Shown here piece after piece: positions 30,566-40,276 of a stretch of DNA of 64,000 bases (position 1 is the stretch's first letter; each line of letters opens with the position of its first letter). The DNA is from Guillardia theta CCMP2712. Its lineage: Eukaryota > Protista > Cryptophyta. Made by a program: the position numbers and the translations under genes. The notes below the pieces were generated by a model, which saw only the letters and a program-made list of their open reading frames with translations, was not told the DNA's origin and ran no database searches. Location: assembly GCF_000315625.1 (NCBI RefSeq), contig NW_005434670.1, positions 492,054-556,053 on the forward strand. The letters are read 5' to 3'.

Positions 30566-33500
30566 TCATGTGCAAGAAGCAGCACCAGGCGTGTGGCTCC
30601 TGCCTCGCACGCTCTCCTCCTCCATGTCGTGGACGTCAGTGAGGTCTGCAACCTGCAGGTGCATGCGTCAGGGCGAGGGGCTCGAGGTTGAGGGAGGAAC
30701 TACCTCACTCAACTCGGCGCCATCGGATGGATACTGCGGGACAGGAGGGGGGAGGTGTGCAGGGCTGGGGGCCGCCTGCAGAAAAGTCACACAGAGTCCT
30801 CTCAGATCCCGCCAGCAGCGCTCACTTGCTGGCTGGTTGTGCTGATCTGTGAGTACGTCGACAAGAAGGTCGCCGCCTGGAGCAAGACGTCACAACCCAC
30901 CACTTCGCCGTCGCTCCTCGCATTACCGTTGCCGTGGTAGCGAAACTCGCAGTGGACGCGGCCGTAGCAGCAGTTGCAGCTGTCGATGCTTCACGCGCGT
31001 CAGTCCAAGAGCTGTGCAGCAACGGAGAGCAACCTGTTGCGGCCGTTGACCGCGATGCCTCGCTCGCGGTCTCGTCGTCCTCTCCGCTGGCGCTGAAAAC
31101 GTTCCCTACATCCCCGACATATCCCACGTCACTCGGAGCTCTGCCACCATGCCCTCCAGGGTCGCTGGTCCCACTCACGGACCCGGCCGTGTAGTGGACA
31201 CTGACCACCTGCCGTTGACATGAGAGAGACACCGATCACATCAACCTGTTAAGGTACCGATTGAGTCTCCTCCACCAAGCTCTGGGCATCCCCGGGGGTG
31301 TTCACTTGCCCACCGTCCCCCTCGTCATCTCCCCACGAGCCGGCACCGAAGGATCCTAATGAGAAGGGCATCAGAGACACGTGTGATGAGGGACGGTGGA
31401 TTTCGGTATAAAGAGAATTGGAGGACAAGAGGGTGTCTACTCACTCTCTGATCCTTGTCGGTGCATAGGAGAAACTGCTTCTGGACTAGGAGCACCCAGT
31501 GAGCCAGTCTCTGCCTCGGAGACATCGTCCTTTGGGACTGTTGACTTTCCTTTGCTCTCTGACCTCCTCCCATCATTCCGCCATGATCCTTGGACTTCTT
31601 CAACATCGTGGTTTCCGTTGCCTGGAACACCTTCCCCTGGGTCTGGGTCTCCTCCACGGAGGAGGAGATAGCCCTGCTCTCCATCGTTGACTTTTCTTCG
31701 CTTGTTGCCACCCCTTCCTTGGGAGCTACTCGAGTCGGCCGCCTTGTCACTCTTGGCATTTTCCTTGGGTTCATTTGATTCAGACTGATGAGCATCACCT
31801 TTGAGAATTGATTTCAGCTTCTCCTCATTAACATGAGAGCTCGATCCAGCTCTCGTCTTGGCAGTGCTCCCCTCATTCCTTCCTCTCTCCTTTCCCCCAG
31901 AGTCCACGGATGTTGCGCCGGGCCCGTCCTGCTTATCTGAGTCCGATGCTCTCTTGCCTTGAGACCTGCCCTTGTCTCCACCTTTTGATTCTCTCGAGTT
32001 TCCATCTTGCTTGTGCTTTTTTGAAGATTTGGTTTCGACAACAGCAGCGTTGTCATTTTCAATGTGATTACGTTTCCCAGATTTATCTTCCTCCTCCTCA
32101 TAGCTTTCATCCATAGCATCGGTCAACTGCTCGTGATCACAAAACATATCGTCATCGTCGTCATCGTCTTTGACATGCTGTTGCTTGCGAGAAAGAGTGG
32201 ATGTCCTCCCCTCGTGATACCTCTTGATCAAATTTCCTGAGACCAAAATAGATTCGAAACGATGCTTCCCCAAGTGCAATGACACTGCACCAACGGTTTT
32301 GAACAGGAATTCTGCTATCTCGAGATAGTATCTTTCACTGACAGGCATCCAAAGATTCCAGTCAAATTCGTTGCCACTGACTCCAACGTAGGATGTGCGG
32401 AGAAAGCGACTGTTGCCCAGAACCTTGACTCCATCTATCTTCATTTTCTCGATATCACTGCCCTTATTACTATGCTTTGCAGCATCCTTGCCTGCTTGTG
32501 TACCCCATTTAAAGACGATTCCAGGCACATCGGCCATGTAAGGATGTAAAATTTCTCCCTTGGGAAAAATTCTATTTAGAAAGTCGCAAAGCAGGGCACG
32601 GAATTCTGTACATTGTGGTACCCCCGACAGCCATCGTAGGTGCGACCGGGGTGGTAAAATTATCTTGGTGTTGTGAATCAAGCGAGAGTTGGCTTGCAGT
32701 CCAACATAATGACTGTTGAGCTCCAGAACCTTGGCTAAATTCACACCATAGCGTTTTGCAATGTCCCTGACTCGCTCTCCATCAGTTGCAGTGTATATTC
32801 CACCCGGAGGAAGCTCGATCGACTTGGGATTCTTCTCCTCCTCCTCCCCAAGATGCACCAAATACTCCAATCTTGCGAGTGACCCATCAGTCTTGATGCC
32901 GAGTATACCCTTCACTTTCATCCATGACAAGACATCGTCGTCACCAAAATCCTTCATTTCCTTCAGAGTCAGCTCCTCAGCAAGGTGTGCTGCTTCAAGC
33001 TGCGAACCAGCTTTGACCTTCGATCGCTCTTCCTCACTCAATCGAGCGTGCTCTGTGTTCCAAGGAACCTTGATTTCTTCTCCGCTCTGAAGTTTTACAG
33101 AGAGCAACAGTTCATTGTCATTCCCTGCCCCATCGGTGATGGAGATCACTTCACCTGGGACCCACTTCCTTTTCGTGTTGCCATGCTTGTTCCTGACTTC
33201 AACCATCTCGCCTTTTCTGCCTGACGGTATTTCTCTTTGAAGCCTGATATACTGAGACGCACAAGGAACATGTTCTTCTGTAACTTTGATATCTTGTGAC
33301 TCGTCCATAGAAAGCACGTAAATCCCATTTTCGAACTTTTTGACCTTCGCTCGAAACCAAGAGCTATCGAGCTCTACTTCAACAGGAGTATTCGCACGAA
33401 GCGGGTTGATTGCGGAGACCTTGCAACTCACAACATCTTCATGTAGTTCCATCCTCACTTTCACTTGAGAAAAGTCCCTGCCGATGGGCACCTCGGCAAT

Positions 33501-34699
33501 GCGACCGATTCCCCATGCATTATCATGTTCATCTCGTAATTCAACCAGTGCATTCTCCTGAATAATTCCTGGACAATCGTCTCGAGTAAACAGTTTTAGT
33601 CGTGGAGTCGTCGGCGTCGAGGCTTCCTTGGCAGCGGGAGGCTTCATTCTTGGATACGGGGAGTTGTCGTTAGGCAGTGCACTAGGTTGATTCGGTCCAA
33701 TCCACGGCGTCGTGTAAGAAATCTTTGAGACAGGTTTCCGGGGAGGAGGGTCTATCACTTTGCACAAATACTGCCACTCCCGTACTTCGATCACATCACA
33801 GGTGATGTACTTGCTTCTGAGCAAGTCCATGAATTCCTTGACCACTTGGGTCTCAGTCTCAATCTCCCCTTTGCCGCTGCGGATCTTCTTGTCGACAGCC
33901 GTCCATGTCGATTTGATCATACTCCGCAGGTTGCTGTGTATCGTTTCGTTCATCTCACGTTTGTGAGCATACTCGTCAACGGTTGTCTCTGCATTCTTCT
34001 TGATCCGGGTCAGGGAGTCGATCAGGTCGGATTGCGGTATGTTCAACTTCACATCCGGATCAGGCAACTTGAAATGCTGCCTCTCACCATCGTCAAAGTC
34101 GATGGTGAACTGCTCTTCAACCCTGCCGGTCTCCGTGGGCATGACCTTGAACTCTGCGATGGTCCCGGGGTACCAGATCCCATCATCGAACAGCACCCGG
34201 ACTGGGTTCCCGATCTGCAACAAAGAGTCATCAACCCATCTCGCTGAACCTCTCGACTCAATGGCCCGCCCCACCTGAAAGAATCGATTCCCTGCCGGCT
34301 TTGCTGGCGGTCTGATCCTGTCCCCGTCGATGTCCAGCCATTCGTCATCCTCATCCGTCGCGCCCACATAGCGAACAAGAACCTGACAATTGGACACACT
34401 CAGCCGGTAGCACGCCCGAGGGCTGTGGATCCATCAAATTCGTGTACAAGGCTCACCTTACTGTTCTCACACCTCCTGACGTTGACCTCCCACCACTCGT
34501 TGTCAGCGCATGCCTCGCACGAGATCCCTTCTCTGAAGTCGAAATTTTCCCACCAGTTTGGTGGATAGCTTGGTTGCACCTGCAGTACGACAGGCCCCGT
34601 TACATTCGACGCTCCTTCACAGCAAGCCCAGTCTTGTGATACCTGGGGTGTCTCCGACATTTCGGACGTGGGTCCACTTACACTCACAGATTCCGCCAT
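30566..34699 (-). CDS. Large chromatin-reader-like protein: about five Tudor/Agenet repeats + chromodomain with inserted LysM + disordered C-terminus
   Basis: 986-codon ORF plus flanking exons, with Tudor-like units (EWWEVNV..VLVRYVG..DEW; VRVLFDDGIWYPGTI..IDFDDGE; VELRD..AWGIGRI; VEVELDSSWFRAKV; VEVRN..KWVPGEV) and LysM IYTATDGERVRDIAKRYGVNLAKVLELN. The 3' exons are tentative. Confidence 0.8.
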
Positions 34700-36327: not shown

Positions 36328-38648
<2,321 letters not shown>

Positions 38649-38821
38649 GGTGAAAGGCCTCCGTTCCCTCTAAGGAAGGAAGCTGCAACTTAGATAAGAC
38701 ACACGCATGAAGGCAAGGAGCCATTCTTGCCCCCTCTCCGGCGAAGGATTCTGCAGATCAATTTCTTTTCGCTGCTTTTCGACTGTAAATTTAGCTGATT
38801 CGTGACCTCCACCCCTTGCTT

Positions 38822-40184
38822 TCAGTCCGAGTCGTCCGATTCGTCCGAGTCGTCTCGCATCTCCTCCGGCAGTTTTGCGCCTTGACGGAACAGCGTCAGG
38901 TCGGATAGGATGGAGAGAACGAATGTCACCGGGGGGGGCTGGCGAGTCCGGGTCCCTCTCGATCATTTCCGGGTCTACTCCCTCCTGGGACTGAAACCAA
39001 GTGAGGGGCGAGTAGGAGGGCAGCAACCGCCGCTTTCACCATCTTCATCTTCACAGCAGGCTTCGGGACTCCCATCTTGAGCATCTTGAAGTACTTGGAG
39101 TACCGAGCGTCGTCCTTGAGGAGAATGACGGGCTCTGAGGACCAGACGTGAGCAAGAAAGGAGGTGGGGAGGAAGGGAGAGGGAAGGACGAAGGGCGGGA
39201 AAGGGAGGGAGGGAGGGCAGGTCGGACAGGGAGGGGTTGGACGGAAGGACGTAGTCACGGAGAGGAACGAATTGGGGGACGGCGGGGTGGGAGGGGGGGN
39301 NNNNNNNNNNNNNNNNNNNNNNNNNNNNNNNNNNNNNNNNNNNNNNNNNNNNNNNNNNNNNNNNNNNNNNNNNNNNNNNNNNNNNNNNNNNNNNNNNNNN
39401 NNNNNNNNNNNNNNNNNNNNNNNNNNNNNNNNNNNNNNNNNNNNNNNNNNNNNNNNNNNNNNNNNNNNNNNNNNNNNNNNNNNNNNNNNNNNNNNNNNNN
39501 NNNNNNNNNNNNNNNNNNNNNNNNNNNNNNNNNNNNNNNNNNNNNNNNNNNNNNNNNNNNNNNNNNNNNNNNNNNNNNNNNNNNNNNNNNNNNNNNNNNN
39601 NNNNNNNNNNNNNNNNNNNNNNNNNNNNNNNNNNNNNNNNNNNNNNNNNNNNNNNNNNNNNNNNNNNNNNNNNNNNNNNNNNNNNNNNNNNNNNNNNNNN
39701 NNNNNNNNNNNNNNNNNNNNNNNNNNNNNNNNNNNNNNNNNNNNNNNNNNNNNNNNNNNNNNNNNNNNNNNNNNNNNNNNNNNNNNNNNNNNNNNNNNNN
39801 NNNNNNNNNNNNNNNNNNNNNNNNNNNNNNNNNNNNNNNNNNNNNNNNNNNNNNNNNNNNNNNNNNNNNNNNNNNNNNNNNNNNNNNNNNNNNNNNNNNN
39901 NNNNNNNNNNNNNNNNNNNNNNNNNNNNNNNNNNNNNNNNNNNNNNNNNNNNNNNNNNNNNNNNNNNNNNNNNNNNNNNNNNNNNNNNNNNNNCCGTCAA
40001 GGCTGTCGAACATGTTCACACCTTGTGGCTGAGCTGGTGCTGGAGGAGCAGCCGGAGGTTCAGCGCTGACGTTGGTCACTTGCGCTTCTGGACCTGTATG
40101 AATCTGCGCGGCTGTGGTTGAGCCACTGGGAGCGCTGGAAGTAGAGGAGGAGGGAGCCTCGTTGGGGGGCGCGTTTGTCGCTGC

Positions 40185-40276
<92 letters not shown>

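What the first reader, a model, noticed from the sequence alone, without database searches (positions are those of the whole stretch)
32571..32924. LysM domain apparently inserted inside a chromodomain
Seen: WMKVKGILGIKTDGSLARLEYLVHLG resembles the chromodomain first half (V..I.......EYLV). A complete LysM follows (32653-32798, IYTATDGERVRDIAKRYGVNLAKVLELN...LIHNTKIILP), then SHLRWLSGVPQCTEFRALLCDFL resembles the second half (CHD-like HxxW plus terminal helix), all in one exon. Known: LysM binds GlcNAc polymers and chromodomains read methyl-lysine. Inference: a nuclear reader coupling a glycan, O-GlcNAc or nucleic-acid ligand to chromatin, an arrangement I do not know from characterised proteins.
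Basis: partly seen in the sequence, partly recalled or inferred. Interest (0 to 1): 0.75.

Follow-up and report, generated by a model that had tools for sequence, protein, structure and literature searches.

The report
LysM domain nested inside a chromodomain
An expressed algal chromatin protein carries a complete LysM (sugar-binding type) domain inserted into a loop of a chromodomain-like fold. The arrangement is real and conserved and I found no description of it, but the chromodomain has lost the residues that normally read methylated histones.

Summary
The stretch 32571-32924 lies on the minus strand in one 2.77-kb exon of a spliced, transcribed five-exon gene. The CDS is 31249-34699 and encodes 1054 aa.

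- **N-terminal part:** the protein starts with an array of Tudor/Agenet domains.
- **Fold of the module:** in an AlphaFold model built with orthologues (pLDDT 80), two strands, a LysM, a third strand and a helix follow in that order.
- **LysM:** it superposes on solved LysM domains (Z up to 7.2, rmsd 1.4-2.2 Å).
- **Flanks:** together they superpose on whole canonical chromodomains across the insertion (CBX1 54/54 residues at 2.0 Å; MPP8 59/60).
- **Sequence support:** a profile of the family with the LysM columns removed matches a chromodomain profile (P 4e-6; 100 shuffles reach at most 14.7 against 31.3).
- **Further parts:** a second chromo-like domain follows.
- **Conservation:** the nested arrangement is kept in at least four divergent environmental orthologues.

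By sequence alignment, the three aromatic-cage positions are Met/Leu/Glu, so canonical methyl-lysine reading is unlikely. The same LysM subtype occurs in bromodomain, ubiquitin/HMG-like and GNAT-like proteins, which points to a nuclear ligand that is still unknown.

Verdict: a new domain architecture made of known folds, of moderate to high interest.

The parts
31249..34699 (-). Coding region of the gene. There are five coding exons (34643-34699, 34457-34579, 34275-34382, 31445-34214, 31249-31355), giving a 1054-aa product. The transcript contigs are about 4.0 kb.
   Evidence: Spliced contigs in runs X1, X2 and X8 show four joints. All four introns are GT..AG on the minus strand. The start codon has an in-frame stop upstream, and the stop codon is at 31249-31251.
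32973..34579 (-). Array of about five Tudor/Agenet-like (royal family) domains, interrupted by introns 34383-34456 and 34215-34274.
   Evidence: Pfam Agenet scores 34.5 bits, E 3e-8, above its cut-off of 27. Tudor_5 is weak. Orthologous contigs are collinear over this part.
32829..32942 (-). Chromo-like domain 1, N-terminal half: strands 1 and 2, with the conserved W-M, I-L-G and E-Y-L-V-H-L motifs.
   Evidence: Model strands 18-26 and 33-39, pLDDT about 87. This half alone against the chromodomain profile gives hhalign score 25.3, P 2e-5.
32643..32807 (-). LysM domain (strand-helix-helix-strand) inserted in the loop between strands 2 and 3 of chromo-like domain 1.
   Evidence: Pfam LysM 19.9 bits, E 7e-4, full profile length. 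pLDDT is 90-98. Foldseek probability 0.99 at rmsd 1.4-2.5 Å. VIA-align Z up to 7.2.
32562..32642 (-). Chromo-like domain 1, C-terminal half: strand 3 (the invariant H-L-R-W) and the C-terminal helix.
   Evidence: Model strand 110-113 and helix 122-133, pLDDT 84-94. Whole chromodomains align across model residues 8-138: CBX1 54/54 at 2.0 Å, MPP8 59/60, CDYL 56/57, Rhino 57/58.
32289..32465 (-). Chromo-like domain 2 (three strands and a helix), also present in LysM-less paralogues.
   Evidence: Model strands 175-183, 186-193 and 201-208, and helix 211-225. Structural matches: CBX4 and Polycomb chromodomains at Z 3.5-3.6 and the GEN1 chromodomain region at Z 3.5. Profile similarity to chromodomains is not significant by sequence.
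32175..32264 (-). Two C-terminal helices that close the conserved module.
   Evidence: Model helices 235-243 and 247-264. They are conserved in orthologues and in the LysM-less paralogues P0041 and P0035.
31249..32174 (-). Low-complexity acidic and Lys/Ser/Gly-rich tail with a K-R-R-K motif, split by intron 31356-31444.
   Evidence: Translations. No Pfam hit.

Best explanation
This is a real, transcribed gene for a 1054-aa chromatin-type protein.

- Architecture (shown): an array of Tudor/Agenet domains is followed by a conserved module of two chromo-like domains and two helices. The first chromo-like domain is split. Its first two strands and its third strand plus helix lie on either side of a complete LysM domain inserted in the loop between strands 2 and 3. 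The two ends of a LysM lie side by side, so it can sit in a loop without breaking the host fold.
- Loss of the cage (inferred from alignment): the host chromodomain lacks the canonical aromatic cage. Like a chromoshadow domain, it more likely serves as a scaffold or protein/nucleic-acid contact than as a methyl-lysine reader.
- Role of the LysM (inferred): it is the most conserved part of the module and belongs to a subtype found in other nuclear proteins (with bromodomains, with ubiquitin/HMG-like domains, with a GNAT-like domain). I infer that it binds a nuclear ligand. The Tudor/Agenet array would supply histone-mark binding, making the whole protein a multivalent chromatin adaptor.
- Ligand: unknown.
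For: - Gene and expression: spliced contigs with four GT..AG introns in three runs from separate studies.
- Fold: AlphaFold2 with a 23-row alignment gives pLDDT 80 and pTM 0.70, and four of five models score above 75. The order of elements is strand, strand, LysM, strand, helix.
- LysM.
- Chromo fold across the insert: CBX1 6d07 54/54 at 2.0 Å, MPP8 3svm 59/60 with 24% identity, CDYL 7n27, Rhino 4quf, and the HP1 chromoshadow domains 9cea and 3p7j.
- Profile-profile match: probability 87%, P 4e-6, with shuffle and reversal controls.
- Conservation: the same nesting occurs in P0001, P0002/P0051, P0003 and the L002 exon pair. Most of the 42 invariant columns fall in the LysM, and several of those are polar residues.
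- Nuclear LysM subtype: P0007 (two bromodomains), P0010, and in the same genome L062 (two bromodomains) and L058 (ubiquitin and HMG-like).
- Agenet.
Against: - Pfam's Chromo model gives no hit on the flanks, and its LysM model stays just under the cut-off for this protein.
- The structural Z-scores for the chromo fold are only 3.4-3.9, a range in which common small folds can match by chance.
- The model rests on a shallow alignment of about eight distinct lineages, and I could not inspect its coordinates or error map.
- The C-terminal half alone is not significant against the chromodomain profile (score 12.6).
- An N-half profile searched against PDB sequences found no chromodomain.
- Nuclear localisation, any ligand and any histone binding are untested.
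Confidence: 0.68

Rival explanations
1. Dual reader. The split chromodomain still binds methylated lysine, and the nested LysM binds a GlcNAc-type glycan such as O-GlcNAc, so the two marks are read together.
For: The chromo fold and the LysM fold are both present and conserved. A conserved Trp sits one residue before the first cage position, and the LysM surface residues are invariant. The Atlas fold search put first a haptophyte cluster in which 77% of members carry Pfam Chromo and 68% carry LysM.
Against: Cage positions two and three are Leu and Glu/Thr/Asp in every orthologue. The G-D-T/S loop of classical LysM is replaced by D-G-E-R/K. No binding data exist.
Confidence: 0.12
2. The flanks are not a chromodomain. 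A LysM simply sits between unrelated linker elements (a hairpin and a helix), and the chromo-like packing is an artefact of a model built on few sequences.
For: There is no Pfam Chromo hit. Z-scores are only 3.4-3.9. The single-sequence model failed at pLDDT 37. The C-terminal half alone is not significant. The N-half profile found no chromodomain in the PDB.
Against: No templates were used, yet four of five models agree with pLDDT 84-94 in the flanks. Whole chromodomains align end to end at 2.0-2.7 Å with 17-24% identity. The joined profile scores about 11 standard deviations above shuffled controls, and its alignment crosses the junction in register.
Confidence: 0.12
3. The LysM-like insert is a purely structural or protein-protein element with no small-molecule or glycan ligand, as in the LysM-fold subunits of mitochondrial ribosomes.
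For: The structural hits include a LysM-fold subunit of the trypanosome mitoribosome and the potassium-binding protein Kbp, so the fold has non-glycan uses. The ligand loop differs from the classical one.
Against: Invariant polar surface residues in the two loops that form the classical binding groove suggest a defined ligand. The same subtype recurs in several unrelated nuclear architectures.
Confidence: 0.08

Closest known systems
MoCVNH-LysM of Magnaporthe oryzae (PDB 2l9y, 5c8o)
   Same: A LysM domain is nested inside another small domain. It was the top Foldseek row for the model, and the nesting is described in PMC4392113.
   Different: The host domain there is a cyanovirin-type lectin in a fungal protein expressed during plant infection. 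Here the host is a chromo-like fold in a Tudor/Agenet chromatin protein.
Canonical chromodomains (CBX1/HP1, MPP8, CDYL, Rhino, Polycomb)
   Same: The fold is the same, three strands plus a C-terminal helix, and aligns end to end at 2.0-2.7 Å. The profile similarity has P 4e-6.
   Different: A 55-residue LysM sits between strands 2 and 3. The aromatic-cage residues are replaced by Met/Leu/Glu, and there is no Pfam Chromo score.
HP1 chromoshadow domain (9cea, 3p7j, 6fto)
   Same: It is a chromo fold without an aromatic cage, and it matched at Z 3.3-3.4 with 57-58 of 60-66 residues aligned.
   Different: Chromoshadow domains dimerise and bind PxVxL peptides. Neither property was tested here, and there is no insert in chromoshadow domains.
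CHD1/CHD4 tandem chromodomains
   Same: Two chromo-like domains lie in tandem with a helical linker. CHD4 matched at Z 3.9 and Chd1 at Z 3.4. From memory, CHD chromodomain 1 also carries an insertion.
   Different: There is no SNF2 ATPase here. The insert is a whole LysM domain, and the second domain is not recognisable by sequence.
Uncharacterised LysM-bromodomain proteins (P0007; same genome, L062)
   Same: They carry the same LysM subtype, with the P-P-G-G...Y...A.D.E...I-A and L-P-P signatures, in a protein of chromatin type.
   Different: In those proteins the LysM stands free between other regions and is not nested in a chromo fold.

Membership tests
LysM (PF01476) | Score at or above Pfam's gathering cut-off (20.9 bits) | tested here: inconclusive
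   This protein scores 16.3-19.9 bits (E 7e-4 on the 118-aa piece, full profile length), just under the cut-off. Orthologue P0003 scores 23.0 bits, which is over, and P0002 scores 20.7.
LysM (PF01476) | Strand-helix-helix-strand fold superposable on solved LysM domains | tested here: met
   pLDDT is 90-98. SleL 4s3j gives Z 7.2, MltD 8rhf 1.4 Å over 45 residues, and the P60 LysM 4uz3 1.6 Å. Foldseek probability is 0.99.
LysM (PF01476) | Sequence similarity to proven LysM proteins | tested here: met
   phmmer over 1.84 billion proteins gives P0005 (six Pfam LysM repeats) at E 2.9e-14 and P0006 at E 5.5e-14. The best PDB sequence hits are MltD, intimin and P60 LysM.
LysM (PF01476) | Binding of GlcNAc-containing glycans | not testable with these tools
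   The loop before helix 1 reads D-G-E-R/K instead of the classical G-D-T/S.
Chromodomain (PF00385) | Match to the Pfam Chromo profile | tested here: not met
   There is no hit at E up to 10 on the flanks or the whole module. The locus is absent from the 73 Chromo hits in this genome.
Chromodomain (PF00385) | Three-stranded antiparallel sheet packed against a C-terminal helix | tested here: met
   The element order is seen in the model. CBX1 aligns 54/54 at 2.0 Å, MPP8 59/60 at 2.7 Å and CDYL 56/57 at 2.3 Å, all spanning the insertion. The Z-scores are modest, 3.4-3.6.
Chromodomain (PF00385) | Profile-profile similarity once the insert is removed | tested here: met
   hhalign gives probability 87% and P 4.3e-6 over 50 columns across the junction. 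Shuffled controls reach at most 14.7 against 31.3.
Chromodomain (PF00385) | Aromatic cage of three residues (Tyr/Trp/Phe or Tyr) for methyl-lysine | tested here: not met
   The aligned positions are Met (with Trp one residue earlier), Leu and Glu. In orthologues they are Leu and Thr/Asp/Gln. This comes from alignment only, because I could not read the model's coordinates.
CHD-type double chromodomain | Tandem chromodomains attached to an SNF2 ATPase | tested here: not met
   A tandem chromo-like arrangement is present, but no helicase or SNF2 domain appears in the 986-aa frame.
Agenet/Tudor (royal family) | Pfam Agenet at or above its cut-off (27 bits) | tested here: met
   The whole frame scores 34.5 bits, E 3e-8, in two stretches. 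Single pieces score 18-19 bits, and Tudor_5 scores 20 bits, which is under its cut-off.

The most novel reading that the evidence does not exclude
Cryptophyte- and haptophyte-type algae may have a nucleus-specific LysM subfamily that reads a so far unrecognised chromatin ligand, for example GlcNAc on histones or nuclear proteins, or another acetylated or charged group. Nesting it inside a chromo fold, next to Tudor/Agenet, bromo and HMG-like modules, would then create a new class of composite chromatin reader.
Probability: 0.17. Interest if true: 0.85.

Novelty: new variant of a known kind. Interest (0 to 1): 0.6.

Why it matters
LysM is known almost only as an extracellular binder of peptidoglycan and chitin, and chromodomains as histone readers. 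A conserved, expressed protein with one nested in the other suggests that some algae use the LysM fold inside the nucleus, all the more because relatives combine the same LysM subtype with bromodomains or HMG-like domains. If the ligand is a sugar modification or another new mark, this would add a reader class to chromatin biology and give a direct handle for testing it. Even if it is not, this is only the second kind of host domain known to carry a nested LysM, and an example of a chromo fold kept as a scaffold after losing its cage.

Tried and rejected
- **Single-sequence AlphaFold model:** pLDDT 37, unusable.
- **Word-index protein searches:** the whole frame and the alignment found nothing or only near-identical relatives.
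- **Pfam on the flanks, the second domain and the LysM-less paralogues:** no family.
- **Protein-atlas feature searches:** only weak LysM leads or nothing.
- **N-half profile against PDB sequences:** no chromodomain. The variable loop dominated the profile.
- **Second domain against the chromodomain profile, and against domain 1:** not significant by sequence.
- **LysM-less paralogue P0041:** its contiguous segment aligns with the family only over the C-terminal half (score 20.6 against a shuffled maximum of 17.3). My by-eye reading that it is an uninterrupted version of domain 1 is therefore not established.
- **SAP-like helix-loop-helix:** my first idea for the N-terminal flank, dropped once the model showed two strands.
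- **Raw RNA reads of run X19:** only three reads, so the evidence for expression rests on assembled contigs that are recorded only as probable RNA. Their splicing shows they are transcripts.
- **Haptophyte Atlas cluster with Chromo plus LysM:** it could not be retrieved for inspection.

Full report
**The gene**

The finding lies on the minus strand in an open frame at 31437-34397. Assembled contigs of about 4.0 kb from three runs of separate studies cover the locus with four joints. On the minus strand all four skipped pieces begin with GT and end with AG. They are 31356-31444, 34215-34274, 34383-34456 and 34580-34642. The contigs are therefore spliced transcripts, and the gene is expressed.

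Joining the exons inside a script gives a 1054-aa product. The start codon is at 34699 with an in-frame stop upstream, and the stop codon is at 31249-31251. I used that joined sequence only to fix lengths and boundaries. It was not sent to any search or folding tool, and all searches used single exons by reference.

The genome has 87.1 Mb in 669 contigs. From memory these figures fit a cryptophyte such as Guillardia theta. I did not verify this.

**LysM**

- Pfam's LysM model covers its full length but scores 16.3-19.9 bits against a cut-off of 20.9.
- The best sequence matches among solved structures are all LysM domains: MltD, intimin and P60.
- An exhaustive search of 1.84 billion proteins found 42 hits. 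True multi-LysM proteins appear at E 3e-14 and orthologues at E 4e-43 to 6e-15.
- Orthologue P0003 passes the Pfam cut-off at 23.0 bits.
- In the model the segment has pLDDT 90-98. It superposes on solved LysM domains at 1.4-2.5 Å, with Z up to 7.2.

The LysM is real.

**The flanks**

Pfam finds no chromodomain in the flanks, and a single-sequence model failed. I then supplied a 23-row alignment made of orthologues, LysM-less paralogues and LysM-only relatives. With it, AlphaFold2 without templates gave pLDDT 80 and pTM 0.70.

The order of elements in the model is as follows.

| Element | Model residues |
|---|---|
| Strand 1 | 18-26 |
| Strand 2 | 33-39 |
| LysM | 54-108 |
| Strand 3 | 110-113 |
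| Helix | 122-133 |
| Linker helices | 147-157, 162-165 |
| Second unit, three strands | 175-183, 186-193, 201-208 |
| Second unit, helix | 211-225 |
| Two closing helices | 235-243, 247-264 |

A search of 48,161 representative chains that does not depend on Foldseek listed LysM domains first. For the flanks it then gave the HP1 alpha chromoshadow domain (58 of 60 residues, 2.4 Å, model range 7-135), CHD4, Chd1, Rhino and the Chp2 chromoshadow domain. For the second unit it gave the GEN1 chromodomain region.

The second look at Foldseek's own list gave whole chromodomains aligned end to end across the insert:

| Chain | Protein | Residues aligned | rmsd | Identity |
|---|---|---|---|---|
| 6d07 | CBX1 | 54/54 | 2.0 Å | 17% |
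| 3svm | MPP8 | 59/60 | 2.7 Å | 24% |
| 7n27 | CDYL | 56/57 | 2.3 Å | 20% |
| 4quf | Rhino | 57/58 | 2.7 Å | 23% |

CBX4 and Polycomb chromodomains matched residues 168-225. The Z-scores are only 3.4-3.9, which is weak evidence on its own.

An independent sequence test agrees with the structural result. In a script, working from the stored alignments, I removed the LysM columns from the family alignment. I compared the resulting profile with a profile of 14 chromodomains taken from this genome. hhalign gave score 31.3, probability 87% and P 4.3e-6. Fifty columns aligned in register on both sides of the junction. Controls:

- One hundred column shuffles gave mean 8.5, standard deviation 2.0 and maximum 14.7.
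- The reversed profile gave 12.1.
- The N-terminal half alone gave 25.3.
- The C-terminal half alone gave 12.6.
- Leaving out the LysM-less rows changed nothing (31.0).

I conclude that the flanks form a divergent chromodomain-like fold with the LysM nested between strands 2 and 3.

**Cage and ligand**

In the hhalign alignment the three aromatic-cage positions of canonical chromodomains correspond to Met (with a conserved Trp one residue earlier), Leu and Glu. Orthologues have Leu and Thr, Asp or Gln at the last two. Canonical methyl-lysine reading is therefore unlikely. This rests on alignment, not on coordinates.

Most of the 42 columns that are invariant among four orthologues of 47-48% identity lie in the LysM and in the H-L-R-W strand. 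They include polar residues in the two loops that form the binding groove of classical LysM domains. The classical G-D-T/S loop reads D-G-E-R/K here. I infer a conserved ligand site whose ligand need not be a GlcNAc polymer.

**Context and relatives**

The N-terminal two fifths of the protein carry Agenet/Tudor domains. Agenet scores 34.5 bits, above its cut-off. Environmental contigs encode collinear orthologues over the whole length. In one lineage an intron lies inside the LysM, so the insert is not bounded by introns.

A LysM-less paralogue family (P0041, P0035) shares the helix, the second chromo-like domain and the closing helices, and combines them with a bromodomain and a Tudor domain. 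The window's own genome has such a paralogue on another contig, L015.

The same LysM subtype occurs in several other proteins:

- P0007, with two bromodomains.
- P0010, whose N-terminus looks like the end of a GNAT domain (by eye only).
- In the same genome, an open frame with two bromodomains (L062).
- In the same genome, an open frame with a ubiquitin-like domain and HMG-like stretches (L058).

An earlier first-reader note of this scan, on another piece of this genome, also reports a LysM-like domain in a bromodomain protein.

The Atlas fold search ranked first a haptophyte cluster of 65 proteins in which 77% carry Pfam Chromo and 68% carry LysM. I could not retrieve it.

**Comparison with the known, and novelty**

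A nested LysM is known from the fungal CVNH-LysM lectin, which was also the top Foldseek row. Chromo folds without a cage are known as chromoshadow domains. Tandem chromodomains are known from CHD remodellers.

I found nothing in the searchable literature on a LysM combined with chromo, bromo, Tudor or Agenet domains. This is a new architecture built from known folds, in uncharacterised proteins. The function is inferred, not shown.

Noticed in passing
L062:931-2640 (+), G000 contig C26 around 693659-693820: An open frame in the same genome has two bromodomains (Pfam E 3.8e-32) and a LysM-like segment of the same subtype as the one studied here.
   Followed up: partly
L058:1-2145 (-), G000 contig C35 around 31350-31505: An open frame of more than 715 aa has a ubiquitin-like domain (E 4.9e-14), a YABBY/HMG-like stretch and a LysM-like segment. 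It is another probable nuclear LysM protein.
   Followed up: partly
L015:1186-3175 (-), G000 contig C89: A LysM-less paralogue with many short introns: bromodomain, Tudor, then the shared helix, second chromo-like domain and closing helices. It is the counterpart of the environmental family P0041.
   Followed up: partly
G000, many contigs (loci L017-L056): At least 73 Pfam Chromo hits. Most are near-identical copies inside open frames of 1200-2000 aa, which looks like chromodomain-bearing retrotransposon families.
   Followed up: no
window 34215-34274: A 60-base in-frame intron with no stop codon. Reading the raw open frame adds 20 residues that the transcripts do not contain.
   Followed up: yes
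P0002, last 21 residues: The C-terminus of this database protein appears to be a translated sequencing adaptor (from memory of the adaptor sequence). The longer cluster member P0051 continues with real sequence at that point.
   Followed up: partly
L002:5893-6013: In a marine environmental orthologue an intron interrupts the LysM itself. The gene caller therefore split the gene into two proteins, P0013 and P0004.
   Followed up: partly
window 38001-40000 and 40187-40275: G+C drops to 0.37 against about 0.53 elsewhere in the window. Just beyond it lies a perfect run of 30 GCT units. Not examined further.
   Followed up: no
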